The notes below the pieces were generated by a model. It saw only the letters and a list, made by a program, of their open reading frames with translations. It ran no database searches and had not been told where the DNA came from. Positions 666 to 64,000 of a stretch of 64,000 nucleotides of DNA are shown here, one piece after another. The number at the start of each line of letters is the position of its first letter. The stretch's first letter is position 1. A program made the translations under genes and the position numbers. Source of the DNA: Podarcis pityusensis (lineage: Eukaryota); the NCBI GenBank assembly GCA_964106645.2, contig OZ067045.1; one strand, given 5' to 3'.

Positions 666-11451
<10,786 letters not shown>

Positions 11452-20145: not shown

Positions 20146-20899
20146 CTCCCCTCCTCCGCTTAGTTTGATCTAACGGACAAGCAGAGCTCTTCCTAGGATC
20201 TCGCCAGACAGCGGCTTTTTTTTTTTAGTTGCAAATCGATGGGCGACAGAAGCCCCACTGAGAGCATTCCTCTCTTTCTCACAGACACAAAGGAAAAATA
20301 ATTAATCAACTCAACATCGAGTGACAGCTCTATCCCATCCCATCTACATAGCACCAGCAAGCTGTTCCTGTCCTGGCCAGTAAAAGGCCAAGGCCACTTT
20401 TATGCTTGAAGGTTGGAAAGTGCTCCGAGAATTGTTGCCCTTGTAAAAGGAACTCGTGCCGTGCAGAGTCTGTGACTGAAGCGGCCTGGCTCTTTGCGGT
20501 TTTGGAAACACTTACTGGCTGCCTACCCACACAGAGACCGGTTCCTTGCCAGGATAGCGTGAGGCTCCTATTAAAGGTCTCTCCTCTCTGCTTCCCCTTC
20601 CTTGATTTGCTTAGCGTGAATTTGACTGTGGCCATAATTTACGCATCTTCCTGGTTTAAGGCCTGGAATAGCCAGCCGAGAAGCAGCGCCAGCTTACTCG
20701 TTCCTTTCCAATCCCAGTTTGATACCAGCAAACCCCGTGGGGGCGCTTCGGTTTTCCTGCCGCAAAGGCACGAGGCTGGCGGCTTCATCATCTTAATAAA
20801 GACGCACACCACACAGTGGAGAGACCGCTTCAAGTGCACAAGCATCGCTTATTATTTCTCAAGCCAGACCTCAGCAGTCCTTACAACAACCCTACAGGT

Positions 20900-21346
20900 A
20901 GACCAGTTATGGCTCGACGGAGTAGAGCTCGCGGGGATGCCGGGGCGCGACGTCACGTGCAGAGGGGAAGGGCAGGTGCGTTTGTCGCTATAGCGATGCC
21001 GCCGCCGCCGCTTCCTCGGCTGTCGTTATGGCAACCTCAGGCGGCGATCACGTCATCGCTGTGCGCTGTGCGCGCGCCGTCCTAACGTCATGAGTCTCGG
21101 CAGTTCCGGCGCGCCGTGCAAGGCGGCGGCAGCGGCGGCGGCGGAGAAGAAAGAGGGCGGGGTCAGGCCCGGGGTGGCTGCGGAGTCGGCGGGCAGAGGG
21201 ATGGCACTCAGCCGTGGAGGCGGCGGCGGTGGCGGCGGGTAAGCGACAGGAGTGTCCGGGGCTCCCTTCCCCCCCGCCGGGCGGAAGCCGCCCGCCTGCC
21301 CCCCCCCACCCGGCTGACCCCTGTGCTCTTCTCTGTGTCTTTGCAG
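20900..21346 (+). promoter_or_regulatory. CpG island, ATXN1L promoter, 5'UTR exon and short intron (21239-21346)
   Basis: GACGTCACGTG (CRE/E-box, 20949-20959) and two RFX X-box-like palindromes (20984-20997, 21022-21035). Donor GTAAGC at 21239; pyrimidine tract plus CAG acceptor at 21346. Confidence 0.75.
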
Positions 21347-21425
21347 GTGATCCCGCCCGGAGACCCCCTTGAGGAGGAGGAGGCGACAGCAGCGGCCCAC
21401 CTTGCAGCTTCCCGAAGCGAGCGCC

Positions 21426-23411
21426 ATGAGAGCGGCTCAGGAACGGGGCCAGGAATTCCTCCCCCCCAAGAAGCGCGACCTGCCGGTGGCTGCCAACAAC
21501 GAAGAGCCGGGGCGGGCGGCTGAGTCGGGTCTGGTGGGCGGTGGCGGCAGCGAGACCTCTGTGGAATGGTCCCGGGGCTCAGCAACAGGCAGGCAGAGCC
21601 AGGCACCTTCACGTTACACGGAGGCTGGTGGCAGCTCCGACACAGTGACCAGTCTTACCGTGGACCAGTACGGCTTATTGTACAAAGTGGCGATGCCCCC
21701 GGCCACCTTCTCACCCGTGGTGAATGTCAGCCCGCTGCCTCCAGCCTTCAGTATGACCTCGCAGCTGATCCCGCACCCTGGTATCCCCTACTCGCCTATC
21801 CATTACACTCAACTTCCTCCTGCTCCCTTGCAGTTTGTGGGATCACACTACTCTGTACCCTATGCCGCCGCTGTGCCTCCTGGCTTCCTGCCCAGCCACC
21901 TTCTGTCCTCTTCAGCCAGCCTTGCTGCCTCTCATATCCCACACTTTGTGCCCTATGCACCTCTCCTGGCTGAAGACTCTGCTCCTTCTCCACAGGCAGC
22001 CCACAGCTTTGGCAAGACCAGTGCCTCAGTTTTGCCTTCAGGCTCTCTGCAGCCCCACGTTGGAGGTCAGCCACTGGATGTTACACAGGGCCGAATTCCA
22101 GTCTATTATCAGATGTCCCGTCTGCCAGCAGGCTATTCATCATTTGAAGCTTCTGTTGCTGGCCCAAACACTGAGCAGTCTCTGCAGGAGAATCAGCTAG
22201 ATCCTAAAGTCACAGCAAATGGGGTGCAAAGGTCTGCCGTAGGGGCAAAGGAAAGTGAGGCTGAAGGGCAGTGGCCAAGGACAACGGTAGAGTGCAGCAC
22301 TGAAGGTACCTTCTTGACAAGCAGTCAGATTTTGAGAACAGAGATCTCTGTGCCATCTCAGCGGAGCACCCCAGATACAGACCTGGAGGTGCAGAGGGTG
22401 GTTGGAGTGCTTGCTTCCCAGGACTACCCTGTTTGTTCTGCTCAGCAGAAGGATGGCTTGAGCCCTCTAAACCTTTCCCATCGTAATCCCCCTGAGCAGA
22501 AGGCAGAGTCAATGAGGAACCCAGTGGAACTTGTGATGGCTGCTACTGCTGAGAAAAGCCACTTTCGGAGACTGTCGCCAAAGTCCCCTGAGGAGCAGCT
22601 CTGCCATCGGCAAATACTGAAAGGCATTACAATGGCCAATGGTCGGCCAGTCTCAGGGTCCCTACATCCTGGGGCTCAGGATGGCCTGGGAGGTGCAAGT
22701 CCTGAGGGAACAGCCCATGAGGGACTACCTGACACGGAATGTGCCCATTCCCAGAGCCACTTACCCTCCCACTTCATGAAAGGAGCCATCATCCAGCTGG
22801 CCACAGGAGAGCTAAAGAGGGTGGAGGACCTGCAGACCCAGGACTTTGTGCGCAGTGCAGAGGTGAGTGGTGGCCTCAAGATTGACTCCAGCACTGTGGT
22901 GGACATCCAAGAGAGTCCCTGGCAGGGTTTCGTCACACTGCATTTTGTGGTGGGGGAGCAGCAGAGCAAAGTGAGCATCGATGTGCCCCCTGAGCACCCT
23001 TTCTTTGTGTATGGACAGGGCTGGTCCTCATGCAGTCCAGAGAGGACGAATCGGCTCTTCTCACTCTCCTGCCACAGGCTGCAGGTGGGAGATGTTTGCA
23101 TCTCCATCAGTTTACAGAGTCTGAATGGGAGGCTTGTGCCCCAGGCAAGCCCCCAGAGTGCTACCCGAGAGAGACCTGGGCGGGGTGGGGAGAGTCTCCA
23201 GGAGCTGCAGAAAAACCCATTGGAGAAGGGTGGGGTGGCAGTGGGCTCCCCCCAGGAATCCACCCACCATGATCCTGTTTCTCTGCATGGTTGGGCAGGC
23301 CCCAGCTTCCAAAGGTCTGGGGAGGAGCCCCGGCCACCACTCCTCCGCCCTTCATTCATTCCCCAGGAGGTCAAGTTGTCCATCGAGGGCCGTTCAAATG
23401 CAGGGAAGTGA
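21426..23411 (+). CDS. ATXN1L: Ataxin-1-like (661 aa, single coding exon), copy 1
   Basis: N-terminus MRAAQERGQEFLPPKKRDLP, STPDTDLEVQ motif, AXH domain (HLPSHFMKGAIIQLATGELKRVEDLQTQDF...), C-terminus RPSFIPQEVKLSIEGRSNAGK. True ATG is 21426; the ORF track starts at an upstream TTG. Confidence 0.97.
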   Translation: MRAAQERGQEFLPPKKRDLPVAANNEEPGRAAESGLVGGGGSETSVEWSRGSATGRQSQAPSRYTEAGGSSDTVTSLTVDQYGLLYKVAMPPATFSPVVNVSPLPPAFSMTSQLIPHPGIPYSPIHYTQLPPAPLQFVGSHYSVPYAAAVPPGFLPSHLLSSSASLAASHIPHFVPYAPLLAEDSAPSPQAAHSFGKTSASVLPSGSLQPHVGGQPLDVTQGRIPVYYQMSRLPAGYSSFEASVAGPNTEQSLQENQLDPKVTANGVQRSAVGAKESEAEGQWPRTTVECSTEGTFLTSSQILRTEISVPSQRSTPDTDLEVQRVVGVLASQDYPVCSAQQKDGLSPLNLSHRNPPEQKAESMRNPVELVMAATAEKSHFRRLSPKSPEEQLCHRQILKGITMANGRPVSGSLHPGAQDGLGGASPEGTAHEGLPDTECAHSQSHLPSHFMKGAIIQLATGELKRVEDLQTQDFVRSAEVSGGLKIDSSTVVDIQESPWQGFVTLHFVVGEQQSKVSIDVPPEHPFFVYGQGWSSCSPERTNRLFSLSCHRLQVGDVCISISLQSLNGRLVPQASPQSATRERPGRGGESLQELQKNPLEKGGVAVGSPQESTHHDPVSLHGWAGPSFQRSGEEPRPPLLRPSFIPQEVKLSIEGRSNAGK

Positions 23412-26064
23412 AGCCCGAGTGGTGGGCGAACTTGTGTGCCACGCTTAACTGGGTTCCTTCCAGTTTGGCCACTGCTCAGATGCTTGGCCCTTCCCCCAGT
23501 TGTGTGCCTAGAATCATTCCACTGACAGAGGCTCCTTCTCTCCACCCCCTGTAGGGGAGGTCTGAGCCTGGGTAGGGTAGATTGGGGTCAGCCAAGGGGA
23601 GACTCTGAAGGAAGCAGTGACTGTGCTGCTTCTGTGAGGAGAGGAGCAAGGGCTCAACATCCCCCACACCTCACTCAAGCACTTTATTGGACACTTGCTC
23701 ACACATAGCAGGAGGGTGCTTTTACCAGGGCAAGGGAGCAGTGAGGGAGTTTGCCAGGTTTCTTCTGCTCGGGTCCCAAGTTAAGGATTTTTGTCTGGGC
23801 CTCCCAGCAGCCCCTCTCCAGGCACCGAGTCAAGGGAGCCTGGATTTCTCCTCAGGGAGGTAGTATTTGTATGCAATTTCCTCACATGTGTTAGATTGAA
23901 AGGAAATGGTTAATAGTCTGTTAAATTGCAAACCTGGCAATGTGTTGCCTCACAGCTCTGCAGCCAGGTAGAACTCGAATCCCATAGGTGGGAATGGTGT
24001 AGGTGTACGTGTGAGAGGATGTTCTAGCTCTGGCTTCTTCAGCTATCTCCATCCTGCTCTTAAGTCCCCACCTCCATCTTCTAGAAAGGCTGCATCCACT
24101 TCTGTTGCAGATGCCTTAGATGTTCACAGGTAAGCCAGGTCTGAATGGCCTGGGCTGACTAAGGCTTGTCACAGTGGTGGATGCCTCAAGTTACAGCCAG
24201 CTCCTTTGAAAAGTGCAATGCAGTTTGTATATAAGAGCATGCTAGTGCACATACAGACACTCCTGCTTTTCCTTGGGGTGATTAAAGCATTTCCTATTGA
24301 GAGTTTGGAGAGGGGACATTCTGGCCACTGTAACCAGCTTGAATGGCCCCCACTACATGTGTAAGATTTCTTTGGATATTAGAAAAATGTATTCAGGTTC
24401 TTCTGATAAAGATGAAAATTGCTCTTCTGCGTGCACTGGTGACTCAAACAGAATGAAAGAAGATAAAACGTGCAAGTGGTTAACAGTTTTTGAGCCGAGA
24501 AAGCTGTAGAACTGCTTGGGTTCAAGACACTGGCTGAGTACCCTCTCCTGCACTGGTGCCCACAACTCGGCAGGGGCGAGCTCTAGGGCTCTGAATCATA
24601 GCCGTGACTCTGCATCAGTGCCATCCAAGTCCCACTCCAAAATAGCAGCCAGGAAGCTCCTCCCACTGCTCCAAATGGGCAGTCTTGGCTTGTTTCCCTT
24701 GGATGTTTTGTCTACAGTTGTTGCTTTTAGGCCATTGCCAACAGGCATTCCTGGCTCACAACGGGAACTGCTTTCCTGTCTGACCAGCCACCTCATCCAC
24801 TCCAAGCCCTCTCTATATGAAAGGTGGAAGACTTTGCTGTTCTCCTCTGGAAGGCCCGGCACTTTGCACTATTCCGAGCCAGGTTTCCCCGCAAACCACC
24901 CTCTGCCTTCCTTACTTGCTCTTGGGCTCCCCTGGATTGTGTGCTTACTAGACCAACGCTCATTTCCATGTAAATGCTGGCCTTGGTTTCTCCTTTGTCC
25001 TTCAGCTCCCCTGCCGCCAGGGAGGAGATGCCTGCTTCATGCCATTAGGGCAGAGTGCCCTTCTACTCCCAGGGCTTCATGGGAGCTGGATCACTTGCAC
25101 AGCATCACAGCAGAAGAGCCTGATTGGCCACCTCTTTCATTGGCACCAACTCTGCCCCTCCGTGGCTATTGAGGGTCAGTTCCCCTCAGTTCATCTGGAC
25201 CGCCCAACACTACTGCCACCCTGGTCCAGTGCTGTTTCAGGATAGCTTGCTGCACAGCCCTTAGGGCCCAGGACCAAGTTAGGAATAGAGCTGCAAAATA
25301 TGGAAGTGTCTTTGGGCACTACTCCATCTGGGGCCGCTGGAGGGTTGGGAGAACCAGCTTCCTAGAGCAATAAGCTATTTCTCTCTTGTGACACTACAGC
25401 ACGACCCCTTTCCAGGCCCTAGTAAATATTTGGGAAGGGCTCCCTAATATGCAATATTGTGGGACTGGCAGCTGCACAGCTGTGTCCATTTGGCCATTCC
25501 ATGGGGTAGGATGGGGGCTGCTAAAAGAGACACGTTTCAGTGTGGGTTGCCAAACTAGGGGGTGATGAACTGGGGTCCTGCTTTTCAGAAGGGCACCAAC
25601 CAGATACCCTTTCCAGCTAAAATGTTTCCCGTCCCTTCTTGCCAGCTGTTTCTGTAGCCCTTGCCTGCAAGAGCAAACATCCACTTCTATTAAGTCCCAC
25701 CTCTGCCCAGAAACACTGAGCGATGGCCTGACCCAGTGGCTTGTTGCAGAGAAAGTTCCTTTGCTATATCTCAAGATGCACTGAGGAAGAAAGCAAACGG
25801 AGTCAGCCTGCCACCCTTCAATCCCTTGCATAGCACCTTAGTTGGGGTGGGTCACCTTCCTGTATGCAGCTGGCAAGGGGCGAGTGTGTAGCAACCCTGC
25901 AACCAACACCAGTCATCTTCGCTCCAAAACCCACTGCATCGTATCTCTAAAGCCTTAGGACTAGCCGAGTGCCCAGCCCCTTTTCTCCTACCTGATCTTT
26001 AATGAAGCATTACCAATCTAAGGAGGATAATCTATTTTGTTGTGCTTTTTTTGTACCTGTTTTA

Positions 26065-26070
26065 AATAAA
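26065..26070 (+). terminator. Candidate ATXN1L polyadenylation signal
   Basis: AATAAA in an AU/GU-rich block about 2.65 kb after the stop codon. Confidence 0.5.
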
Positions 26071-27087
26071 TCAATTTGTACTGTATATTTGTATTTTGGG
26101 TGAGATCCTTTTTCCTGTTTTACCATTTAAAGTCTCTGTACACACAGATTGTATTTTTATTGTTAATGCTCTTATGAATACTGCATTTAACTTGTTGACT
26201 TATGTAAACAGTATATATACATATATCTATATCTATATATATATCTATATAATTATAAGCCAATAGCTTTTCCTTTGATGTGTCTGTGTCTTGCTTGTCT
26301 CCTGGAGAAAATTTTGGCAGAAATACCAAAGCTCATAAAGGAAACTTCCTTACATTCATACAATGGTCACTAAAGCCCCAATTAGCAATGTTCACACTGG
26401 CACAAATACCTCTGTTCTGTTGTGTAAAAAATTTAACAGGCTGCACATAGGTTTTATGATTTAAGATTAATAGAACAGAACAGACCTGGCTAACAAGACA
26501 GAGATAACTTCACCTCGCTTGTGCAGCCAAGTCTCTCCCTTTTACCTAGTTTGGAAGTTGGGCAAGAGACGACACAGGCTGCTGACCAAGAAAAGAAATA
26601 TACCCCTCAGCAGGGTCTTCCTCTAGCCTTTGTTTAGAAGTCTGCCTTTCACTGGTGCTCCTTCCACCACCATCTCTCTACGCACAAAGGCAAGAAGAGC
26701 AGCAGCACTCAAATCTAGGACCTTTCTTCCTCCCCAACACATATCCCCCCAGAATGTCAAATTCTTCCACAAACCTCCCATTTGGTGCTGCTGTACCTAA
26801 GTCTAGCAGCCACTATGATTAGGCCTAATACACCCCTGTGGGTAACTTGTGAGGCTCCAAGCCGTATTATACACCTCCCTCTTCAGGACTCCACCTTCTT
26901 TGCTAGTCCCCACTTAAGAGCTCCAGCGTGATGTAGTAAGGGGCAGGCTACAGAACTGCAAAGTTCCAGCTGGATCTTGCCCAGCAAGGAAGCAAGCTGG
27001 GCAAGGCAGAAGCAGCAGCTGCCTCTCAAGCTGCTGCAGTGAATTGGCCAAGCCCAAGAGGCACAGACTGAGGACATGTACAATTAA

Positions 27088-27093
27088 TTTATT
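27088..27093 (-). terminator. Candidate ZNF821 polyadenylation signal
   Basis: AATAAA on the minus strand about 140 nt after the ZNF821 stop. Confidence 0.55.
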
Positions 27094-27230
27094 TCTGATC
27101 ACAGCCAGTGCGCCCGCCCCTTCCTCCCTCCCTGCCCCTCTCAGACCGTTGTCACACTCCAGTTCCATGCTTCACTGGCGGAGCAAGTGGGGCCTCAGCA
27201 GACAAGAGCAGGTCCTCCTTTTTACCCTCC

Positions 27231-30200
27231 TCAGTGCAGGGCACTGGGACTCGGCTCCTCAAAGGCCATTTTACCAAGCAGCTGCCCCTCAAGCTCTAGC
27301 CCACCCACTGGCAGTGGGAAGAAGTTCATCTCGGCTGCCAATGCAGCCATGGCTGAGGGGTCCTGGCCAAACTGTGCCCGCAGCATCATGTCCATTTTCT
27401 CCAGCCGCCGCTTTAGCCTCTTGGCTTCACGCTCCCGGATGAGCCGAGCCTGCCGCTTTTCAGGGGTCTCGTTGGCCCGCTTGAGGCGCATCGCTTCACG
27501 GTCCCGCTGCAGGCGGCGCGCACGCTGCTCGTCCGTCTCCTGCATACGCTGCAGCCGCTTGGCCTCTCGATCCCTCATGCGCCTCACCTCCCGCTCCTCC
27601 GGCGTCTCGTTGTCTCGACGGCTCTTCTTAGCTGTGCGCTCTCGCTCCAGGCGCTGCAGCCGCACCTCCAGGGGCTCGTTCTGCCTTCGCAAGGCCCACT
27701 TGCGAACCCCTGGAGCTTGAGCTTCCAGAAGCTTGCGGTAGGCCACGCAGCTGTTGCACACCAGGAGGATGCCAGCAGGATACACTGTGGGGCTGACAGC
27801 AGCAGCAGCACCACCACCTGCTTTTTCCTCAGCACCAGAAGAAGCCTCAGGGAGGGGAATGGGCAGGGCATCTCCACACAGCACCTCTGACACCTTCTCA
27901 CTGTGAAAGTCAAAGAGTAGAAATGACGGGTGGTCGGCACAGATCTTAAGAAACCATTGTGTAGGTTTGCAAGCTACTGCCTTAGCTGTAACCCTCCCCC
28001 TCCCTCTGGCCATGCTTACAAGCCACCCCACCCACATGAATGCTGGCCTGCAGAATGCTTCTGGCTGGGGTCACCTATTCCAGCTGCCTCCAGAAATTGC
28101 CAGGTATAACCTCCATTGCTTCCATTGAACAGGGCCCCTCCAGGACTTCCAAAATGCGGCCTGGGCCACGTGGTCCCAGTCCCACCGTCAGAGATGCCCA
28201 CTTCTCACCTGTTGAAAGTAGCATGGCTGGTGAAGCGAGCCCCACACACCGCACAGTTGGACAGTTGGTCCTCGGAGTGGATGAGGAGGTGCCTGCCCAA
28301 GGAGCCCGGGGAGCTGAGTGCTCGGCCACAGACGGGACACAGGTAGCTCTTGGCACTGACCACAGCTGCCGTATGCTGCAAACGAGGCCGGGCTGTGAGG
28401 CAAGGGCTCCGCTGCCCTGTCCCCCTCTCAGCTGTCCCTATGAGGGCTGGCAGCCAAGGCCAAGCCACGGAAGAGCTCCCTCTTCTGTTAGGGAAAGAAG
28501 GAGAGAGACCCGCAAGGCCTTCCCTGGGATGTGGTGCAAACCCACCAGGGGGGATGATTCAAATTGCATCCAATGCCAACAGCCCCTGCCCCCATCCCCA
28601 CCCTTTCCCAGTCCAGGATTACTAATTTCAGCCTGGAAGGAAAGGGGGAGCCAGGGCAGGGATGGTTTAGCCTTGCGTGATGGTCTCATCAAAGCCCCCT
28701 CTAAGTACCTGATAGACGTGAGTGACAAGCTGCTCCCTGCTTCCACACTCTAGCTGGCAGAGGGGACAACGGGAGAGTCCCATCAGGGTATCTGGGCTGG
28801 CATTTAAACCCATCTGCAAGCAAGGAAAGGCAGGCTAAGGAAAGAGCAGAGGACAAGACCCATGCCTGGTATTCTGCCACACGCATACACATACCCCTCC
28901 CCCCCAACTAATGCTGCACCAGACCTTTTAAGACCATGTTGACGGATTCTCTACAATGTAAGATTAGCCCTGCGCAATCAGATTGAGGGTCTACCTAGTT
29001 GTGTATTGTATTTCTAACACACAGCAGCCAACCAAATGCCTCTTCTGGGAAGCCCAGAATGAGATGACAACAGCTCTATCACTCCCCTTTCCCCCATTAC
29101 TATTAGGGAACTCTAATGCCAAAAAGTCCAGACCCAATCACTTGAGCTTGCTGTAGTGATCACTTGGACACATCAATGGACCAGGCCCAGGAATCCCAGA
29201 GTGGGCTATACAGTCCTCTTTCTCCATGCTAGGGCCATCCAAGAGTCTGCTATTGCTATTCTCCTTCCACCGAGTAACCACAGCAGTGTTGCACTTTTGC
29301 TTTAGTATGTGTGCCAATGTGATGCACTTGCCTCATGGCCTCGAGCGACCTGCTTGCTGCAGCCCAGCTGCTCAGTAAGTTCCAGTTCCTTTTTCACTGT
29401 CGCTGATGCTCCGTCCTCCTCAGAAGCATGGGAGGAGACCTCATCTTGTGTTGTCTCATCCCCCTCGCTATCACCTGGAATACAGAACAGCTTTAGGCCT
29501 CTGCCACAAACCAGCTGACAGGATTCCAAAGCAGCATGCAGGTGTTTGGTCTCTCCCAGGTGTCCCAGAGCTGCCCATCGTGTACAAGATGGGGAAACTC
29601 ACTGTTGTTGCTGCTGCTGCTGCTACTGCTGCTGCTGGAGTCCTTTTCTTGTGGTGGAGGTGGCAGCTGCTGCATGAGTGGTGACTGGGCTCCAAGCAGC
29701 CCAGGGAAGTCTCTTCGCATCATGGCCTGACGTGTGTGCTCTTCTAACCCAGCAAAGACTTGCTCCCCTGGAAGTACAATGGGGGAGGAAGAAGCCGCAT
29801 TAGACCATTGCCCTTCCCAAGCCCAGTCATTCCTTGCCCCCTCCTCAGATGCCCAGTGATGGTCTCCCCTACCTGAAGATGGCCCAGAATGGGACTAATG
29901 CCTGGGCTCCATTCCCCAAAACAGCTTTCCCCAAACCCTTCCTGCAAAGCAACGGTGGCCTGACCAATCCGTCCCTTCACATCCTTTCCAACATGACCTG
30001 GAAATACAAATGTCTTCAGCAGCATTAAGCACACAGGGAGGGCTCTTGCCTGCCCTGGCTCCGCCCTAGAATTTGCATGTGCTCTCCCACCCCCAGGGCC
30101 CATATTTTGGAAGAGCTTGTCCTGCCATACAGGTTCTCCTCCAGGGGTAAAGCTGTTACATGTGTGTAAAAGATGCTTTAGTATAGGCAATAGCAATCCT

Positions 30201-30837
30201 ACTTATCTACTTTTGCAAGCCAAATTTGTGGTGGGAGACTTCTTCTGTGGATTTTGTAGTCCAGGTTTAGTTATCTGCTTTAGTTCCTCCTTGATACGTT
30301 TTCTCTTAAGTTGTGCAAAGTGGGCAGTGCTTGCCTGAAATTGCCAGACTCTTTCCTGGGCCTTTGCTATTTCAATTCTGATCCTAAAGCTGCACAATGA
30401 GGAACAGGGGACTTCCAGGCACCATTGTGCAAGGGAGACTAGCCAGCCATTCCCAACTAGTGCTGAAAAGCTGTTCATTTGCAGAAGAAACATCAGTGGG
30501 TAAGGTGGCCCAATGAGAGACAGAATGCCACTAGAATGGCGGAGAGGGGTTCTGAGCCCCCAGAGTACCTAAGGAGCCCTTAGGCTCCAAGAGGTGGTAC
30601 GTGGACATGTCTCAGCTCAGCCAACAAATCCTCGATGCTGGGCAGGGAGTCCCCACCAGGCTATGGGAGAAGAATGCAGCAAATAGTGGAGGGGAGGGCT
30701 GTCCCCCCCATCATTTTGCGGATGAGGATGCCTCGCTTAAGCGGGGGAAGGGGGGGAAGGTGGAAGTGACAACAGCCCCCCTCCCCTTATTACTCACAGT
30801 GGACTTTATTGGGGGTGGTCTGTTTCCGACGGGACAT
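27231..30837 (-). CDS. ZNF821: Zinc finger protein 821 (429 aa), copy 1
   Basis: Exons 30798-30837 (MSRRKQTTPNKVH), 29603-29767, 29332-29474 (GC donor), 28709-28813, 28209-28375 (C2H2 CPVCGRALSSPGSLGRHLLIH), 27231-27900 (ETPEEREVRRMRDREAKR repeats). Phases are consistent and total 1290 nt. Confidence 0.96.
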
Positions 30838-36700: not shown

Positions 36701-39016
36701 GGCTACCGGTGGGCACCTACCAGCCTTTCACCAACCTTCACCCACCTCAGATTCCAGCAACACCTCCAACATATGAGTCTGTAAGTACTGCTGATGAAAA
36801 ACAAAAGCTGAATTGCTGGGAGGGCAAGTCCTCTCTGCTGGGACTGTTGCTGTCCCTAGTCTAGTGCTGGGTATTGGCAGGCCTTCCCACTTGGACTGAC
36901 TGAGGAGTTGCCATCCACTGGATTTGAGCTTGCAGCAAACTTCATGCACCTTTGATATGATTTTGATTTATTGCATTTCTATGTTGGCTTTTCATTCATT
37001 CATTCTATGTTGCTTTTCATCTCAAAGCAGCTTACAAACAATAAATAGCCATAACATAATAAAACATACTAGCATGTCGCAAATACAGCATACATCATAT
37101 AAAATAATTAACAAATTATCAATAAAACATCAATAAAACAGTGGCAATCTATAAAAAACTTAAGAAAACAGCAACTAAAAAATAAGCTAAACCTCACAAT
37201 TACAGCAAGTCATGTGATTAACAAATCAATTCGGCATTTAGAATCTATAAAACAATATTAAAAACATTAACAAAATAGCAATTAAAAATATAAGCTAAGC
37301 ACTAAGTTCATTCACACAGTCTCTGTACCCCCATGACTCATAATCTTTCACTCTGTTCAGTTCATTATAATACACATAAATGCACATAATGCACTGGCTG
37401 GGGTCCTTGAGTAGTGGGCCATGGTGGAGATGATGGGGCTCTTAGGCCTACCGCCAGTGGTAAGGTGGATGTTGCCTGCCTAGGCATTGTTGAGGAGAAA
37501 CTTGCCCAGGTCACTTTCAATAATCAGGAGTCCCATTCCCACTTAAGGAAGTCCAAGACAAGCCTGTCCCTCTGGAGCAGTGAGTGGAAACTACACTTGG
37601 TATAGAGGCCAACCAGGAGGTCCAGCAGTGGCCCTGCAGCCTGTCCACCAGGAGCTGTTCCAGCTTCTTCAGCCGCACCTTGGTTGACGATGTGGTGGTG
37701 GAAGAGGCAGCCACTGAGGGGAGCGAGCAGAGCAGCTACTTGAGTCTACCACGCAGGAGGGAGGGGCTGAGATAATGATACCAAGAGAGCCCCAGCATGA
37801 TCTCAGCAGCCTGGATGAGCTTGCAGGCAGTGACTCAGAGGTCACCTTGGTTTCAGAGTCCAGGCTGCTGCCCATGGAAGGCATGAGCTGACGTTGGCTG
37901 GCAGGGGTGGAGGATGAGATGTGGGGTGGGTTGAGCAGCTACAGAGTGTGGAAATGGGGATGTGTCCACCTTCATGCCCTTGTGCTTGTTCAGCTGCTGC
38001 TCTCCAGACTTCTGTGGTTGCTGGTGGTTCATGTCAGGTTGAAGGTGAGACTGCCAGCGATGGTGAAGAGCTACAGGCCATCCTTGGGGGACATAGCCAG
38101 GGCCACTTTCTAGTCAGGTAGTCAGCCATGCTGAACGGCTCTCCCTCACCTATGGCACCACCAGGCCAGGCTCACCACCACTGCTTCCTCCTCCTCCAGA
38201 TCCCTCATTTCATCCTTCCTTCTGCTGTCTGGCAAGGCTGCATAAAGAAGATGGGAACATCAGATATGGTGCTTCTGCTGTGCATGTAGGCCTCTGGGGA
38301 GTTGTCAGGTGGTGGTTCTGTGTGGGGTGCTCCATGCAAAGCCAGCTTTTTTCTGTTTCAGATTGATGACATGGGTGCTGACAAGGAATTGCCACCCCCA
38401 CAGGTGACCGGTGAGTGCAGGGCCGGAGGGGAAGGCTGTGGAGCTGGCAAGGCAGTGAGGAGGGAGGGAGGTGGTGATGTCAGGGGAAAGCTGGTGCTTG
38501 TGTTTATTGTTGGTCCCCTTCACTCTTGTGTTCGCTCTTGAGTTGCTGAGGTAAGCATGTGCCCATGTGTGTCTGTGTTGGGGCAGAGACTGGGACTCTT
38601 CATGGCAGAGAGCTTGGGCCCCTTTAGCAACTGGTAGGAGCTGCAAGGCTCAACTGAAGTGCAGCAAGTGCTCACTTCTGCAGGACATATACTAACTGTA
38701 GTACAGCAAAAAGAAGAATGGTCCTACCCCTGCCCCTACTACTGTTGGGTAGACTACTGTTTTCGCTGCCTTGAGCCTGCCTACTGCTTGTAACCAGTCA
38801 CTCTTGTCTGCTGCAGGACCAGCCCCAAAGCCACAGCCGAGGGGGAGGCCACCAGCTGCAGTTCCTAGTTCGGGTGATAATTTTGTGCTGCCAGAGTTGC
38901 CATCTGTGCCAGACACGCTGCCTGCCGCTTCTGCTGGTGCCAACACTTCCGCCTCAGAAGACATTGACTTCGATGACCTCTCTCGAAGGTTTGAGGAACT
39001 GAAGAAGAAAACTTAA
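33794..39016 (+). CDS. IST1: IST1 factor associated with ESCRT-III (364 aa)
   Basis: Runs from MLGSGFKAERLRVNLRLVINRLKLLEKKK to DIDFDDLSRRFEELKKKT. Exons 33794-33881, 34861-35041, 35183-35270, 35540-35623, 36056-36166, 36255-36455, 36688-36780, 38362-38410, 38817-39016; total 1095 nt, in frame. Confidence 0.97.
34444..34728. mobile_element. pogo/Tigger-type non-autonomous DNA transposon
   Basis: TA-CCATATTTTTC...GAAAGATACGG-TA termini; CpG-rich, young-looking interior. Confidence 0.75.
37538..37691 (-). pseudogene. CDC42BPB: Captured CDC42BPB (MRCK-beta)-like exon 1 fragment; probable 5'UTR at 37692-37780
   Basis: Reads STKVRLKKLEQLLVD, then after a deletion/frameshift LLDLLVGLYTKCSFHSLLQRDRLVLDFLKW+G. 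MRCK-beta is MSAKVRLKKLEQLLLD...[29 protein letters not shown]+G. Confidence 0.87.
37781..37890 (-). pseudogene. CCNL2: Captured cyclin L (CCNL2-like) exon 1 3' fragment
   Basis: With one frameshift reads (T)PSMGSSLDSETK.DL*VTACKLIQAAEIMLGLSW, versus CCNL2 [35 protein letters not shown]. CGA>TGA and CGAG>CAAG are CpG-decay changes. Confidence 0.82.
37963..38038 (-). pseudogene. USP7: Captured USP7 exon 1 fragment
   Basis: cctgacATG, then MNHQQPQKSGEQQLNKHKGMKVD, versus USP7 [26 protein letters not shown]. Differences are mostly G>A transitions. Confidence 0.82.
38039..38129 (-). pseudogene. IMPDH1: Captured IMPDH1-like first coding exon fragment
   Basis: With frameshifts reads MADYLT..SGPGYVP(K)DGL*LFTIAGSLTFN, versus IMPDH1 [33 protein letters not shown]. 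Ends at AA of the Asn codon, the recalled exon end. Confidence 0.82.
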
Positions 39017-51839: not shown

Positions 51840-53523
51840 CCCCAAAAGGATTATAATTCGAACATCAAACAAGCGATTTCCCCCCCTTGATTGCAGGGGA
51901 GGAGGGGGGAAAGGTTTGAACTGTATTTCCCTGTAGAAAAGAGAGGAAAAGAAGCTAAAATCCACCGCTCAAAACCCTGGAACGGGTTGCCAGTGAACAG
52001 TAAGAAAGCCATATTGGGAATGCGCTGTTGCTGAAAGTACTCTTTGACAGTTAACTCTGCATCTGAGATACAAGTAAGATACAATATTTCTGACTGGCTT
52101 CTCCTGGTTTTAAAGTAACAGGAAATAACTGAGATTGAAACTGTTGTCCTTTTTGTGAATTGGGGGGCTAAAGGAAAAAGTTAATTACTTTAAGACACTT
52201 CTGACTGCTACTGTGTCCCCCTAGAGGAAGTTTGAAATTGTTACAATAGCAGCTGGGCCAGGGGAATTTTCCACTTCAAAACAAATTCTGATCGTGAGAT
52301 TGACCTTGGACCTTATCTAGAGTGTTATGGCAGATGGAAAGGAGAAAATAGATTCGCTACAGGAAAAAGCAACGAGGTCTGGCAGAGTATTTCGTACAGA
52401 CGGTGGGCTGCAGCGAAGAGCATCGACATCTGGCCCTTCTGGATTACCAACAGGAGCCTCATCGGCACAACCTAAACCCAAAGGAATGGCAGCTGAAGAT
52501 GCTTTGGCTCAGGCACTTGGTAAAATTAATGAATCTTTGGACAAAATAAGTAAACAAGTAGCATAAGCATTGGGCAAAATTGACCAAAATACTACAAGTA
52601 TTAATAATTTGGGACAGAAGGTAAATACCAATACAGAAACTATTCAGAAATTACTACAGGAATCTACCTCGACACGAAAGACAGCCGAAGAGGCAAAGGA
52701 AATAGCAACAGCTACAGCCACTGTGGTAGAAGAGAAGATACCACCGTTATACAAACAACTTGAAGACCACAGGTCAATATTGTCTATGATTGAGTTGAAG
52801 GAGAAACAAACGAATTTAAGGATCAGGGCCGTACCTGAACTTGAGAAAGACAACTTGATTGACTTTCTTACGCAGGAATTTGCAAACTTTTGGAACCCAG
52901 ATTTGGAGAAGGATAGTTTCAAGATAGTGAGTGCCTTTAGGCTTGGAAGAGGAGGGAGGAGGAACAGGGTGAGAGACTGTTTGATCACCCTCCGAACAAA
53001 AGAGGAGAGAGACAAAATCTTGAGTCTGCACTTCCAGAAGACTTTGGAAATACATCAGTCAAAAGTGGAGATATTTAAGGATATTCCGAAGTATCTTTTG
53101 GACCTTAGGTCCAATTATAGAGATTTGGTTGCCCTGTTGAGAAGTAACATAATTATCTTTAGGTGGGAATTCCCCCAAGGCCTATCCTTTAGTTACAAAG
53201 GGAAGAAGATAAAAATAAGATCAGAGGACGACAAAGATAGATTTTGGAGAGACCACAGAGAAGACCTACAGAAGGAAGCTGCAGAAGAGTTAAGAGCACT
53301 TGTAAGCGAAACTTTAGACATACCAGGTTTACCTCCTGAACTAAAAGACCGCCTGAAGAAGGGGATACCACCGACAGATCAGGAACAGGCGCTGGGTGCA
53401 GTTGGAGGAGAAGCAAAGTAACTACATCATGGCTCTGCAACTATTAAGCTGGAACTGTAATGGTTTGAACTCCCCTCAGAAAAGGAGATCTGTGTTTCAT
53501 TTATTAAAAAAGGAACAATTGGA
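51840..53523 (+). mobile_element. L1-clade LINE, 5' portion (5'UTR, ORF1 with one premature stop, start of ORF2), truncated by assembly gap
   Basis: ORF1 52327-53421 has a coiled coil then NLRIRAVPE...AFRLGR...IFKDIP...FRWEFPQGL, with TAA at 52564-52566. ORF2 from 53429 reads MALQLLSWNCNGLNSPQKRR (APE endonuclease N-terminus). 5' boundary approximate. Confidence 0.9.
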
Positions 53524-53723: not shown

Positions 53724-54908
53724 GCGACAGAAGCCCCACTGAGAGCATTCCTCTCTTTCTCACAGACACAAAGGAAAAATAATTAATCAACTCAACATCG
53801 AGTGACAGCTCTATCCCATCCCATCTACATAGCACCAGCAAGCTGTTCCTGTCCTGACCAGTAAAAGGCCAAGGCCACTTTTATGCTTGAAGGTTGGAAA
53901 GTGCTCCGAGAATTGTTGCCCTTGTAAAAGGAACTCGTGCCGTGCAGAGTCTGTGACTGAAGCGGCCTGGCTCTTTGCGGTTTTGGAAACACTTACTGGC
54001 TGCCTACCCACACAGAGACCGGTTCCTTGCCAGGATAGCGTGAGGCTCCTATTAAAGGTCTCTCCTCTCTGCTTCCCCTTCCTTGATTTGCTTAGCGTGA
54101 ATTTGACTGTGGCCATAATTTACGCATCTTCCTGGTTTAAGGCCTGGAATAGCCAGCCGAGAAGCAGCGCCAGCTTACTCGTTCCTTTCCAATCCCAGTT
54201 TGATACCAGCAAACCCCGTGGGGGCGCTTCGGTTTTCCTGCCGCAAAGGCACGAGGCTGGCGGCTTCATCATCTTAATAAAGACGCACACCACACAGTGG
54301 AGAGACCGCTTCAAGTGCACAAGCATCGCTTATTATTTCTCAAGCCAGACCTCAGCAGTCCTTACAACAACCCTACAGGTAGACCAGTTATGGCTCGACG
54401 GAGTAGAGCTCGCGGGGATGCCGGGGCGCGACGTCACGTGCAGAGGGGAAGGGCAGGTGCGTTTGTCGCTATAGCGATGCCGCCGCCGCCGCTTCCTCGG
54501 CTGTCGTTATGGCAACCTCAGGCGGCGATCACGTCATCGCTGTGCGCTGTGCGCGCGCCGTCCTAACGTCATGAGTCTCGGCAGTTCCGGCGCGCCGTGC
54601 AAGGCGGCGGCAGCGGCGGCGGCGGAGAAGAAAGAGGGCGGGGTCAGGCCCGGGGTGGCTGCGGAGTCGGCGGGCAGAGGGATGGCACTCAGCCGTGGAG
54701 GCGGCGGCGGTGGCGGCGGGTAAGCGACAGGAGTGTCCGGGGCTCCCTTCCCCCCCGCCGGGCGGAAGCCGCCCGCCTGCCCCCCCCCCCACCCGGCTGA
54801 CCCCTGTGCTCTTCTCTGTGTCTTTGCAGGTGATCCCGCCCGGAGACCCCCTTGAGGAGGAGGAGGCGACAGCAGCGGCCCACCTTGCAGCTTCCCGAAG
54901 CGAGCGCC

Positions 54909-56894
54909 ATGAGAGCGGCTCAGGAACGGGGCCAGGAATTCCTCCCCCCCAAGAAGCGCGACCTGCCGGTGGCTGCCAACAACGAAGAGCCGGGGCGGGC
55001 GGCTGAGTCGGGTCTGGTGGGCGGTGGCGGCAGCGAGACCTCTGTGGAATGGTCCCGGGGCTCAGCAACAGGCAGGCAGAGCCAGGCACCTTCACGTTAC
55101 ACGGAGGCTGGTGGCAGCTCCGACACAGTGACCAGTCTTACCGTGGACCAGTACGGCTTATTGTACAAAGTGGCGATGCCCCCGGCCACCTTCTCACCCG
55201 TGGTGAATGTCAGCCCGCTGCCTCCAGCCTTCAGTATGACCTCGCAGCTGATCCCGCACCCTGGTATCCCCTACTCGCCTATCCATTACACTCAACTTCC
55301 TCCTGCTCCCTTGCAGTTTGTGGGATCACACTACTCTGTACCCTATGCCGCCGCTGTGCCTCCTGGCTTCCTGCCCAGCCACCTTCTGTCCTCTTCAGCC
55401 AGCCTTGCTGCCTCTCATATCCCACACTTTGTGCCCTATGCACCTCTCCTGGCTGAAGACTCTGCTCCTTCTCCACAGGCAGCCCACAGCTTTGGCAAGA
55501 CCAGTGCCTCAGTTTTGCCTTCAGGCTCTCTGCAGCCCCACGTTGGAGGTCAGCCACTGGATGTTACACAGGGCCGAATTCCAGTCTATTATCAGATGTC
55601 CCGTCTGCCAGCAGGCTATTCATCATTTGAAGCTTCTGTTGCTGGCCCAAACACTGAGCAGTCTCTGCAGGAGAATCAGCTAGATCCTAAAGTCACAGCA
55701 AATGGGGTGCAAAGGTCTGCCGTAGGGGCGAAGGAAAGTGAGGCTGAAGGGCAGTGGCCAAGGACAACGGTAGAGTGCAGCACTGAAGGTACCTTCTTGA
55801 CAAGCAGTCAGATTTTGAGAACAGAGATCTCTGTGCCATCTCAGCGGAGCACCCCAGATACAGACCTGGAGGTGCAGAGGGTGGTTGGAGTGCTTGCTTC
55901 CCAGGACTACCCTGTTTGTTCTGCTCAGCAGAAGGATGGCTTGAGCCCTCTAAACCTTTCCCATCGTAATCCCCCTGAGCAGAAGGCAGAGTCAATGAGG
56001 AACCCAGTGGAACTTGTGATGGCTGCTACTGCTGAGAAAAGCCACTTTCGGAGACTGTCGCCAAAGTCCCCTGAGGAGCAGCTCCGCCATCGGCAAATAC
56101 TGAAAGGCATTACAATGGCCAATGGTCGGCCAGTCTCAGGGTCCCTACATCCTGGGGCTCAGGATGGCCTGGGAGGTGCAAGTCCTGAGGGAACAGCCCA
56201 TGAGGGACTACCTGACACGGAATGTGCCCATTCCCAGAGCCACTTACCCTCCCACTTCATGAAAGGAGCCATCATCCAGCTGGCCACAGGAGAGCTAAAG
56301 AGGGTGGAGGACCTGCAGACCCAGGACTTTGTGCGCAGTGCAGAGGTGAGTGGTGGCCTCAAGATTGACTCCAGCACTGTGGTGGACATCCAAGAGAGTC
56401 CCTGGCAGGGTTTCGTCACACTGCATTTTGTGGTGGGGGAGCAGCAGAGCAAAGTGAGCATCGATGTGCCCCCTGAGCACCCTTTCTTTGTGTATGGACA
56501 GGGCTGGTCCTCATGCAGTCCAGAGAGGACGAATCGGCTCTTCTCACTCTCCTGCCACAGGCTGCAGGTGGGAGATGTTTGCATCTCCATCAGTTTACAG
56601 AGTCTGAATGGGAGGCTTGTGCCCCAGGCAAGCCCCCAGAGTGCTACCCGAGAGAGACCTGGGCGGGGTGGGGAGAGTCTCCAGGAGCTGCAGAAAAACC
56701 CATTGGAGAAGGGTGGGGTGGCAGTGGGCTCCCCCCAGGAATCCACCCACCATGATCCTGTTTCTCTGCATGGTTGGGCAGGCCCCAGCTTCCAAAGGTC
56801 TGGGGAGGAGCCCCGGCCACCACTCCTCCGCCCTTCATTCATTCCCCAGGAGGTCAAGTTGTCCATCGAGGGCCGTTCAAATGCAGGGAAGTGA
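54909..56894 (+). CDS. ATXN1L: Ataxin-1-like, copy 2 (probably allelic)
   Basis: Same protein as copy 1 except C393R (T22602 vs C56085); at least one synonymous change. Confidence 0.93.
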   Translation: MRAAQERGQEFLPPKKRDLPVAANNEEPGRAAESGLVGGGGSETSVEWSRGSATGRQSQAPSRYTEAGGSSDTVTSLTVDQYGLLYKVAMPPATFSPVVNVSPLPPAFSMTSQLIPHPGIPYSPIHYTQLPPAPLQFVGSHYSVPYAAAVPPGFLPSHLLSSSASLAASHIPHFVPYAPLLAEDSAPSPQAAHSFGKTSASVLPSGSLQPHVGGQPLDVTQGRIPVYYQMSRLPAGYSSFEASVAGPNTEQSLQENQLDPKVTANGVQRSAVGAKESEAEGQWPRTTVECSTEGTFLTSSQILRTEISVPSQRSTPDTDLEVQRVVGVLASQDYPVCSAQQKDGLSPLNLSHRNPPEQKAESMRNPVELVMAATAEKSHFRRLSPKSPEEQLRHRQILKGITMANGRPVSGSLHPGAQDGLGGASPEGTAHEGLPDTECAHSQSHLPSHFMKGAIIQLATGELKRVEDLQTQDFVRSAEVSGGLKIDSSTVVDIQESPWQGFVTLHFVVGEQQSKVSIDVPPEHPFFVYGQGWSSCSPERTNRLFSLSCHRLQVGDVCISISLQSLNGRLVPQASPQSATRERPGRGGESLQELQKNPLEKGGVAVGSPQESTHHDPVSLHGWAGPSFQRSGEEPRPPLLRPSFIPQEVKLSIEGRSNAGK

Positions 56895-59800
56895 AGCCCG
56901 AGTGGTGGGCGAACTTGTGTGCCACGCTTAACTGGGTTCCTTCCAGTTTGGCCACTGCTCAGATGCTTGGCCCTTCCCCCAGTTGTGTGCCTAGAATCAT
57001 TCCACTGACAGAGGCTCCTTCTCTCCACCCCCTGTAGGGGAGGTCTGAGCCTGGGTAGGGTAGATTGGGGTCAGCCAAGGGGAGACTCTGAAGGAAGCAG
57101 TGACTGTGCTGCTTCTGTGAGGAGAGGAGCAAGGGCTCAACATCCCCCACCACCTCACTCAAGCACTTTATTGGACACTTGCTCACACATAGCAGGAGGG
57201 TGCTTTTACCAGGGCAAGGGAGCAGTGAGGGAGTTTGCCAGGTTTCTTCTGCTCGGGTCCCAAGTTAAGGATTTTTGTCTGGGCCTCCCAGCAGCCCCTC
57301 TCCAGGCACCGAGTCAAGGGAGCCTGGATTTCTCCTCAGGGAGGTAGTATTTGTATGCAATTTCCTCACATGTGTTAGATTGAAAGGAAATGGTTAATAG
57401 TCTGTTAAATTGCAAACCTGGCAATGTGTTGCCTCACAGCTCTGCAGCCAGGTAGAACTCGAATCCCATAGGTGGGAATGGTGTAGGTGTACGTGTGAGA
57501 GGATGTTCTAGCTCTGGCTTCTTCAGCTATCTCCATCCTGCTCTTAAGTCCCCACCTCCATCTTCTAGAAAGGCTGCATCCACTTCTGTTGCAGATGCCT
57601 TAGATGTTCACAGGTAAGCCAGGTCTGAATGGCCTGGGCTGACTAAGGCTTGTCACAGTGGTGGATGCCTCAAGTTACAGCCAGCTCCTTTGAAAAGTGC
57701 AATGCAGTTTGTATATAAGAGCATGCTAGTGCACATACAGACACTCCTGCTTTTCCTTGGGGTGATTAAAGCATTTCCTATTGAGAGTTTGGAGAGGGGA
57801 CATTCTGGCCACTGTAACCAGCTTGAATGGCCCCCACTACATGTGTAAGATTTCTTTGGATATTAGAAAAATGTATTCAGGTTCTTCTGATAAAGATGAA
57901 AATTGCTCTTCTGCGTGCACTGGTGACTCAAACAGAATGAAAGAAGATAAAACGTGCAAGTGGTTAACAGTTTTTGAGCCGAGAAAGCTGTAGAACTGCT
58001 TGGGTTCAAGACACTGGCTGAGTACCCTCTCCTGCACTGGTGCCCACAACTCGGCAGGGGCGAGCTCTAGGGCTCTGAATCATAGCCGTGACTCTGCATC
58101 AGTGCCATCCAAGTCCCACTCCAAAATAGCAGCCAGGAAGCTCCTCCCACTGCTCCAAATGGGCAGTCTTGGCTTGTTTCCCTTGGATGTTTTGTCTACA
58201 GTTGTTGCTTTTAGGCCATTGCCAACAGGCATTCCTGGCTCACAACGGGAACTGCTTTCCTGTCTGACCAGCCACCTCATCCACTCCAAGCCCTCTCTAT
58301 ATGAAAGGTGGAAGACTTTGCTGTTCTCCTCTGGAAGGCCCGGCACTTTGCACTATTCCGAGCCAGGTTTCCCCGCAAACCACCCTCTGCCTTCCTTACT
58401 TGCTCTTGGGCTCCCCTGGATTGTGTGCTTATTAGACCAACGCTCATTTCCATGTAAATGCTGGCCTTGGTTTCTCCTTTGTCCTTCAGCTCCCCTGCCG
58501 CCAGGGAGGAGATGCCTGCTTCATGCCATTAGGGCAGAGTGCCCTTCTACTCCCAGGGCTTCATGGGAGCTGGATCACTTGCACAGCATCACAGCAGAAG
58601 AGCCTGATTGGCCACCTCTTTCATTGGCACCAACTCTGCCCCTCCGTGGCTATTGAGGGTCAGTTCCCCTCAGTTCATCTGGACCGCCCAACACTACTGC
58701 CACCCTGGTCCAGTGCTGTTTCAGGATAGCTTGCTGCACAGCCCTTAGGGCCCAGGACCAAGTTAGGAATAGAGCTGCAAAATATGGAAGTGTCTTTGGG
58801 CACTACTCCATCTGGGGCCGCTGGAGGGTTGGGAGAACCAGCTTCCTAGAGCAATAAGCTATTTCTCTCTTGTGACACTACAACACGACCCCTTTCCAGG
58901 CCCTAGTAAATATTTGGGAAGGGCTCCCTAATATGCAATATTGTGGGACTGGCAGCTGCACAGCTGTGTCCATTTGGCCATTCCATGGGGTAGGATGGGG
59001 GCTGCTAAAAGAGACACGTTTCAGTGTGGGTTGCCAAACTAGGGGGTGATGAACTGGGGTCCTGCTTTTCAGAAGGGCACCAACCAGATACCCTTTCCAG
59101 CTAAAATGTTTCCCGTCCCTTCTTGCCAGCTGTTTCTGTAGCCCTTGCCTGCAAGAGCAAACATCCACTTCTATTAAGTCCCACCTCTGCCCAGAAACAC
59201 TGAGCGATGGCCTGACCCAGTGGCTTGTTGCAGAGAAAGTTCCTTTGCTATATCTCAAGATGCACTGAGGAAGAAAGCAAACGGAGTCAGCCTGCCACCC
59301 TTCAATCCCTTGCATAGCACCTTAGTTGGGGTGGGTCACCTTCCTGTATGCAGCTGGCAAGGGGCGAGTGTGTAGCAACCCTGCAACCAACACCGGTCAT
59401 CTTCGCTCCAAAACCCACTGCATCGTATCTCTAAAGCCTTAGGACTAGCCGAGTGCCCAGCCCCTTTTCTCCTACCTGATCTTTAATGAAGCATTACCAA
59501 TCTAAGGAGGATAATCTATTTTGTTGTGCTTTTTTTGTACCTGTTTTAAATAAATCAATTTGTACTGTATATTTGTATTTTGGGTGAGATCCTTTTTCCT
59601 GTTTTACCATTTAAAGTCTCTGTACACACAGATTGTATTTTTATTGTTAATGCTCTTATGAATACTGCATTTAACTTGTTGACTTATGTAAACAGTATAT
59701 ATACATATATCTATATCTATATATATATCTATATAATTATAAGCCAATAGCTTTTCCTTTGATGTGTCTGTGTCTTGCTTGTCTCCTGGAGAAAATTTTG

Positions 59801-60714
59801 GCAGAAATACCAAAGCTCATAAAGGAAACTTCCTTACATTCATACGATGGTCACTAAAGCCCCAATTAGCAATGTTCACACTGGCACAATTACCTCTGTT
59901 CTGTTGTGTAAAAAATTTAACAGGCTGCACATAGGTTTTATGATTTAAGATTAATAGAACAGAACAGACCTGGCTAACAAGACAGAGATAACTTCACCTC
60001 GCTTGTGCAGCCAAGTCTCTCCCTTTTACCTAGTTTGGAAGTTGGGCAAGAGACGACACAGGCTGCTGACCAAGAAAAGAAATATACCCCTCAGCAGGGT
60101 CTTCCTCTAGCCTTTGTTTAGAAGTCTGCCTTTCACTGGTGCTCCTTCCACCACCATCTCTCTACGCACAAAGGCAAGAAGAACAACAGCACTCAAATCT
60201 AGGACCTTTCTCCCTCCCCAACACATATCCCCCCAGAATGTCAAATTCTTCCACAAACCTCCCATTTGGTGCTGCTGTACCTAAGTCTAGCAGCCACTAT
60301 GATTAGGCCTAATACACCCCTGTGGGTAACTTGTGAGGCTCCAAGCCGTATTATACACCTCCCTCTTCAGGACTCCACCTTCTTTGCTTGTCCCCACTTA
60401 AGAGCTCCAGCGTGATGTAGTAAGGGGCAGGCTACAGAACTGCAAAGTTCCAGCTGGATCTTGCCCAGCAAGGAAGCAAGCTGGGCAAGGCAGAAGCAGC
60501 AGCTGCCTCTCAAGCTGCTGCAGTGAATTGGCCAAGCCCAAGAGGCACAGACTGAGGACATGTACAATTAATTTATTTCTGATCACAGCCAGTGCGCCCG
60601 CCCCTTCCTCCCTCCCTGCCCCTCTCAGACCGTTGTCACACTCCAGTTCCATGCTTCACTGGCGGAGCAAGTGGGGCCTCAGCAGACAAGAGCAGGTCCT
60701 CCTTTTTACCCTCC

Positions 60715-63247: not shown

Positions 63248-64000
63248 CTGGAAGTACAATGGGGGAGGAAGAAGCCGCATTAGACCATTGCCCTTCCCAA
63301 GCCCAGTCATTCCTTGCCCCCTCCTCAGATGCCCAGTGATGGTCTCCCCTACCTGAAGATGGCCCAGAATGGGACTAATGCCTGGGCTCCATTCCCCAAA
63401 ACAGCTTTCCCCAAACCCTTCCTGCAAAGCAACGGTGGCCTGACCAATCCGTCCCTTCACATCCTTTCCAACATGACCTGGAAATACAAATGTCTTCAGC
63501 AGCATTAAGCACACAGGGAGGGCTCTTGCCTGCCCTGGCTCCGCCCTAGAATTTGCATGTGCTCTCCCACCCCCGGGGCCCATATTTTGGAAGAGCTTGT
63601 CCTGCCATACAGGTTCTCCTCCAGGGGTAAAGCTGTTACATGTGTGTAAAAGATGCTTTAGTATAGGCAATAGCAATCCTACTTATCTACTTTTGCAAGC
63701 CAAATTTGTGGTGGGAGACTTCTTCTGTGGATTTTGTAGTCCAGGTTTAGTTATCTGCTTTAGTTCCTCCTTGATACATTTTCTCTTAAGTTGTGCAAAG
63801 TGGGCAGTGCTTGCCTGAAATTGCCAGACTCTTTCCTGGGCCTTTGCTATTTCAATTCTGATCCTAAAGCTGCACAATGAGGAACAGGGGACTTCCAGGC
63901 ACCATTGTGCAAGGGAGACTAGCCAGCCATTCCCAACTAGTGCTGAAAAGCTGTTCATTTGCAGAAGAAACATCAGTGGGTAAGGTGGCCCAATGAGAGA

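What the first reader, a model, noticed from the sequence alone, without database searches (positions are those of the whole stretch)
37538..38129. Each recognised fragment stops at its parent gene's first splice donor
Seen: similarity ends at ...ACC TTC AA| (IMPDH, 38039), ...ATG AAG GTG GAC A| (USP7, ~37963), ...CTG GGG CTC TCT TGG| (cyclin L, equivalent to LRLPQ, 37781) and ...AAG TGG G| (CDC42BPB, 37538). No recognisable parental exon 2 or intron follows. Recalled human first coding exons end at GLTYN (phase 2), DMEME+G, LRLPQ and FLEW+G. The 5' ends are variable: 6 nt of UTR for USP7, mid-CDS for CCNL2, ~90 nt of UTR for CDC42BPB. Fixed donor ends with variable 5' ends is the signature of splicing into cryptic acceptors, not of template switching or ordinary processed pseudogenes.
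Basis: partly seen in the sequence, partly recalled or inferred. Interest (0 to 1): 0.9.

Follow-up and report, generated by a model that had tools for sequence, protein, structure and literature searches.

The report
Lizard retroelement stacking four first exons
An old, now inactive mobile element in wall lizards carries the starts of four unrelated housekeeping genes joined end to end, each apparently cut where its first intron begins, which suggests mobile elements outside primates can also grow by repeatedly picking up first exons from RNA.

Summary
The feature lies antisense in IST1 intron 36782-38362 of a Podarcis lizard. On the minus strand it reads IMPDH1, USP7, an unknown linker, CCNL2, CDC42BPB, an OTUD1 piece the finding does not name, and a repeated L2-like tail. 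All four stated end points are confirmed and none is followed by GT. That they are first donors rests on recalled human gene structure; I could not fetch those four lizard genes. The copy is shared with Zootoca, decays like intron DNA (93%), and is absent from three non-lacertids. It belongs to a family: contig depth falls from the tail (60-200x) through OTUD1 and CDC42BPB (4-19x) and CCNL2 (about 3x) to USP7/IMPDH1 (1x). The one junction testable against a lizard parent (CDC42BPB to OTUD1) is not a clean AG join. The pattern does not exclude template switching, which has made U6-L2 chimeras in lizards. Best reading: an L2-mobilised element grown by serial first-exon capture, like primate SVA_F1. 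The joining step is splice trapping (0.42), reverse-transcriptase capture of free exon 1 (0.33) or trans-splicing (0.12). The scan earlier noted the CDC42BPB-OTUD1 fusion on other DNA (s1-707737).

The parts
38130..38230 (-). GC-rich leader, probably IMPDH1 5' UTR; the 5' limit of the insertion is uncertain (about 38230-38290)
   Evidence: sequence; outgroup intron homology resumes only near 38322
38039..38129 (-). decayed IMPDH1 first coding exon, ATG at 38129, ends in phase 2 of the Asn codon
   Evidence: Zootoca copy less decayed; gene name from recall
37963..38038 (-). decayed USP7 exon 1: 6 nt of leader, ATG at 38032, ends in phase 1
37905..37962 (-). unidentified pyrimidine-rich linker, also present in other copies
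   Evidence: variants in 2 contigs, depth about 3x
37781..37904 (-). decayed 3' part of cyclin L (CCNL2-type) exon 1, ends at the last codon of LRLPQ
   Evidence: a paralogous copy table 5c
37538..37780 (-). decayed CDC42BPB exon 1: 90 nt of leader, start codon at 37690 (ATG in Zootoca), 25-nt internal deletion, ends in phase 1 after Trp58
   Evidence: parental mRNA loose ends
37525..37537 (-). 13-nt junction between the CDC42BPB end and clear OTUD1 homology; not a clean donor-to-AG join
   Evidence: (family letters at 37531-37532 in 11 contigs)
37385..37524 (-). internal piece of the intronless OTUD1 coding region, about 80% identical over aligned columns, with short deletions; its 3' end is not at a GT
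36960..37384 (-). high-copy AT-rich tail ending in a stem-loop and short A-rich repeats (L2-like 3' end)
   Evidence: L2 assignment by resemblance (recall; PMC4476161, PMC7983390)
36782..38362 (+). host IST1 intron holding the insertion in antisense

Best explanation
A dead copy of a non-autonomous retroelement family mobilised by an L2-type LINE through its 3' stem-loop. Founder (inferred): an OTUD1 mRNA piece joined to the LINE tail by template switching. Growth (order read from the layout, stepwise timing inferred): CDC42BPB, CCNL2, USP7 and IMPDH1 first exons were added one after another at the 5' end. Most likely joining step (inferred): a copy landed in sense in intron 1 of an expressed gene, exon 1 was spliced to a cryptic acceptor in the copy or in DNA just upstream of it, the RNA ended at the tail and was retrotransposed again. 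GC-rich first exons may also have supplied a promoter, as described for SVA_F1. The family and RNA-level origin I put at about 0.85; the cis-splicing step at the confidence given.
For: No GT after any module, and tight joins. Protein matches stop at the recalled exon-1 residues. Nested depth gradient from tail to 5' end, and 11 contigs sharing the CDC42BPB-OTUD1 junction. Tail tip folds into a stem-loop in the Zootoca copy, z -2.9. L2 needs its own 3' structure and leaves short or no target duplications (PMC4476161). Precedent of kinase first exons spliced onto SVA, with further exons added later (PMC6139936). Acceptor-like sites exist in the leaders and linker.
Against: The only junction testable against a lizard parent is not a clean AG join: the nearest AG lies 4 nt before clear OTUD1 homology, yet 13 other letters stand there. 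It needs four separate sense insertions into first introns; from recall CCNL2 intron 1 is short in human. No intermediate carrying USP7 without IMPDH1 was seen at 80% likeness. A 5'-truncation gradient alone would also give falling depth, so stepwise growth is not proven. The Podarcis tail tip no longer folds better than shuffles (z 0.3).
Confidence: 0.42

Rival explanations
1. Same family, but exons were added during reverse transcription: the LINE enzyme left a 5'-truncated template and jumped to the free 3' end of an exon 1 released by the first step of splicing (or the two RNAs were ligated first), as with U6-LINE chimeras.
For: It predicts exact donor ends, arbitrary 5' ends, no AG and a few extra letters at joins. 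The family junction has 2 extra letters and then an 11-mer that also occurs inside the CDC42BPB module (chance about 1e-4, or nearer 1e-3 since OTUD1 explains 6 of the 11; noticed after the fact). L2 template switching is documented in Anolis (PMC4476161). The OTUD1-tail join itself is not at a donor. An unchecked note (s1-716481) reports an exon-1-only retrocopy elsewhere in this genome.
Against: Free 5' exons are short-lived and held in the spliceosome (established knowledge). Internal exons should be caught too, but four of four are first exons. I found no published case.
Confidence: 0.33
2. Trans-splicing: element RNA with a cryptic acceptor took the first donor of other pre-mRNAs without inserting into those genes.
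For: Explains donor ends and first-exon bias with no need for insertions into short introns (inference).
Against: Also predicts AG at the joins, not met cleanly at the one tested; natural trans-splicing is rare in vertebrates (established knowledge).
Confidence: 0.12
3. DNA-level capture (Helitron or Pack-type transposon, or repair-mediated), with ends only appearing to sit at donors because intron sequence is unrecognisable.
For: Such elements favour GC-rich 5' gene ends (recall); a hAT element with a gene piece was noted in this genome (s1-711318, not checked by me).
Against: No GT after any module; only 6 and 13 nt to the next gene; no terminal inverted repeats; 3'-biased depth and a LINE-like tail.
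Confidence: 0.04

Closest known systems
Human SVA_F1 (MAST2 exon 1) and chimpanzee pt_SVA_D6 (STK40 exon 1)
   Same: Non-autonomous retroelement whose 5' part is a GC-rich first exon ending at its donor; a Ser/Thr kinase gene among the sources; further exons added in some copies; in pt_SVA_D6 the acceptor also could not be reconstructed (PMC6139936).
   Different: No SINE-R, VNTR or Alu part; L2-like stem-loop tail instead of L1 poly(A); a lizard, not a primate; four first exons in series on an OTUD1 piece; old and decayed.
U6-L2 and U6-AnolisSINE2 template-switch chimeras
   Same: Cellular RNA joined 5' of an L2-type 3' end; short or no target duplication; found in a lizard (PMC4476161).
   Different: Cargo here is mRNA first exons, several in series, and the chimera amplified as a family.
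L2-partnered squamate SINEs (Squam3, AnolisSINE2)
   Same: Non-autonomous, borrow an L2 3' end, simple-repeat tail, few target duplications (PMC7983390).
   Different: No tRNA-derived head found here; the 5' part is made of protein-gene exons.
Helitron and Pack-type gene-fragment capture
   Same: Pieces of several unrelated genes in one element, same orientation.
   Different: Those copy genomic DNA, so ends do not sit at donors and introns come along; neither is seen here.

Membership tests
SVA_F1-like exon-trapping retroelement (works like) | Captured piece ends at the exon 1 donor | tested here: inconclusive
   Ends match recalled human positions and PDB residue numbers and no GT follows; lizard parent loci not obtained
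SVA_F1-like exon-trapping retroelement (works like) | AG acceptor just upstream of the join in the receiving sequence | tested here: inconclusive
   One junction testable: AG 4 nt before clear OTUD1 homology but 13 other letters at the join; three joins untestable
SVA_F1-like exon-trapping retroelement (works like) | Chimera amplified as a multi-copy family | tested here: met
   11 contigs share the junction; depth 4-19x on CDC42BPB and OTUD1
SVA (member) | SINE-R, VNTR and Alu-like parts, poly(A), hominoid host | tested here: not met
   None present; host is Podarcis
L2-mobilised non-autonomous element | 3' stem-loop followed by simple repeats | tested here: met
   Zootoca copy z -2.9; the same tip recurs in many contigs; Podarcis copy decayed
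L2-mobilised non-autonomous element | Tail homologous to a known autonomous L2 3' UTR | not testable with these tools
   No repeat library available; assignment is by resemblance
L2-mobilised non-autonomous element | Target-site duplication | tested here: inconclusive
   No convincing one; L2 leaves short or none (PMC4476161) and the copy is old
Helitron or Pack-type DNA capture | Genomic fragments with intron starts; terminal inverted repeats for Pack-type | tested here: not met
   No GT after modules; no terminal inverted repeat
Ordinary processed pseudogene | Spliced downstream exons and poly(A) of one gene | tested here: not met
   Five genes, no exon 2 of any, no poly(A)

The most novel reading that the evidence does not exclude
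An L2-type reverse transcriptase repeatedly captured free exon-1 splicing intermediates, building a retroelement from stacked first exons with no splice acceptor involved; a route of exon shuffling I found no description of.
Probability: 0.3. Interest if true: 0.85.

Novelty: new variant of a known kind. Interest (0 to 1): 0.62.

Why it matters
First-exon capture by a retroelement family is best documented for primate SVA riding on L1. This case extends it to a reptile and probably to a stringent L2 partner, with four rounds instead of one. Because roughly 10-20 paralogs and annotated parent genes exist, it is a ready test of whether such elements gain exons by splicing or during reverse transcription. 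The copy itself is a neutral fossil with no sign of function.

Tried and rejected
Exact look-up of ATXN1L failed. Rfam has no hit in the element. No paper describing the family turned up; Hancks 2009 was not held. Exaptation rejected: identity to Zootoca 93.1%, against 94.5-95.8% for neighbouring introns and 98-99% for exons. The Rhineura OTUD1-like gene is not the founder; it lacks the tail. The tail is not OTUD1 3' UTR.

Full report
Setting. The window holds AP1G1, ATXN1L, ZNF821, IST1 and a polycystin-like gene. The ZNF821 last exon is 100% identical to Podarcis muralis and P. lilfordi proteins, so this is a wall lizard. The finding lies on the minus strand inside the plus-strand IST1 intron 36782-38362.

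Observation. The four end points and leader lengths are as stated (USP7 ends at 37963). Gene names were checked piece by piece. The second CDC42BPB piece hits MRCK beta at E 5e-5 and the alignment ends at W58; the first piece hits it too. Raw lizard RNA reads laid on this module continue into parental sequence that is colinear with the fossil and fills its 25-nt deletion. The USP7 and cyclin L pieces of the Zootoca copy have those proteins as their only PDB hits, with weak E-values (0.69, 0.7), ending at residue 27 and at the Q of LRLPQ. IMPDH1 is named from recall. None of the four ends is followed by GT; 6 nt separate IMPDH1 from the USP7 ATG and 13 nt separate CDC42BPB from OTUD1. That the ends are first donors depends on recalled human structures (coding nt 98, 79, 288 and 175); I could not fetch the lizard genes. 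At USP7 the next two letters could also belong to exon 2, so that end is good to about 2 nt. If the recall holds, chance is about 1e-5 to 1e-8 under a simple uniform null.

What follows CDC42BPB. A lead from note s1-707737 was tested: 37524-37385 is a piece of OTUD1 (PDB E 2e-5; best representative hit is lizard OTUD1; about 80% identical to the Podarcis gene over aligned columns, a third of the changes of CpG-decay type). OTUD1 is intronless and the piece does not end at a GT. Then comes an AT-rich tail of about 420 nt whose tip folds into a stem-loop in the Zootoca copy (z -2.9) but no longer in Podarcis. Its layout resembles squamate L2 3' ends; that is recall, not a library match.

Age and constraint. 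The same insertion sits in Zootoca vivipara at 93.1% identity, against 94.5-95.8% for neighbouring introns and 98-99% for exons: no sign of constraint. The orthologous intron is 614 nt in Rhineura, 1198 in Varanus and 384 in Sceloporus, with no match to the element. So it inserted after the split from amphisbaenians and before Podarcis and Zootoca parted. No convincing target duplication survives.

A family. Genomic contigs laid at 80% likeness give depth about 25 on single-copy flanks, 1500-5600 on the tail, about 465 on OTUD1, 107-425 on CDC42BPB, 60-95 on CCNL2 and the linker, and 26 on USP7 and IMPDH1. Depth is not copy number, and parental genes can add a little, but 11 contigs share the CDC42BPB-OTUD1 junction letters and one 2.1-kb contig spans it. 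No other contig at this threshold spans the CCNL2-CDC42BPB join or reaches USP7. The gradient fits LINE-type 5' truncation, stepwise gain of modules, or both. RNA runs from a related species gave only scattered reads and no evidence of an element transcript; that is a weak negative.

The acceptor test. It could be run only at CDC42BPB-OTUD1. The parent has an AG 4 nt before the first clearly homologous letter, but the element carries 13 other letters there. With the family-majority letters the join reads as 2 unexplained letters, then an 11-mer that matches OTUD1 in 6 letters and the inside of the CDC42BPB module in all 11. This is not a clean donor-to-AG join. It does not refute splicing: in chimpanzee pt_SVA_D6 the acceptor could not be reconstructed either and 4 unexplained letters stand at the join (PMC6139936), and an acceptor in flanking DNA would leave such a linker.

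Mechanism. Shown: the module order, no intron starts, multi-copy status with 3' bias, neutral decay, lacertid distribution among the species checked. Inferred: mobilisation by an L2-type LINE, which needs its own 3' structure (PMC4476161); a founder made by template switching between OTUD1 mRNA and LINE RNA; serial gain of first exons. For the joining step I give cis splice trapping 0.42, capture of free exon 1 during reverse transcription 0.33, trans-splicing 0.12, DNA capture 0.04.

Comparison. It works like SVA_F1 and pt_SVA_D6, down to a kinase first exon, but is not an SVA. It differs in host, probable partner LINE and the depth of stacking. Paper searches found no description, within a library that lacks most subscription journals.

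Verdict. Real, old, non-functional and unusual: a new variant of a known kind, interest 0.62, with the central mechanistic question still open and cheap to settle with the lizard assemblies.

Noticed in passing
window 20243-30520 and 53724-64000: 10.3-kb duplicate at 99.77% identity (ATXN1L and ZNF821 twice) starting right after the masked gap; likely an assembly artefact.
   Followed up: no
window 52570-53523: L1-like ORF1 of 283 codons followed by the start of an ORF2-like frame running into the gap; named from recall.
   Followed up: no
window 1434-1519 minus: SNORD71 in an AP1G1 intron.
   Followed up: no
L001 3648-3901: Zootoca-only insertion of about 255 nt in the element's tail, with terminal inverted repeats and a TA duplication: a mariner-type MITE.
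   Followed up: no
L001 about 3256-3272: Zootoca-only 17-nt tandem duplication across the CDC42BPB-OTUD1 join.
   Followed up: partly
L001 about 2844 and 3023 (window 37962 and 37780): In Zootoca the two segments after USP7 and after CCNL2 begin with the same five letters; unexplained, possibly chance.
   Followed up: no
L007: Rhineura has a second, intact OTUD1-like gene on the same chromosome-scale contig as OTUD1; it lacks the element's tail.
   Followed up: partly
window 37330-37364: RNA reads from a related species show a relative of the tail with different flanks, so the tail family is transcribed from other loci.
   Followed up: no
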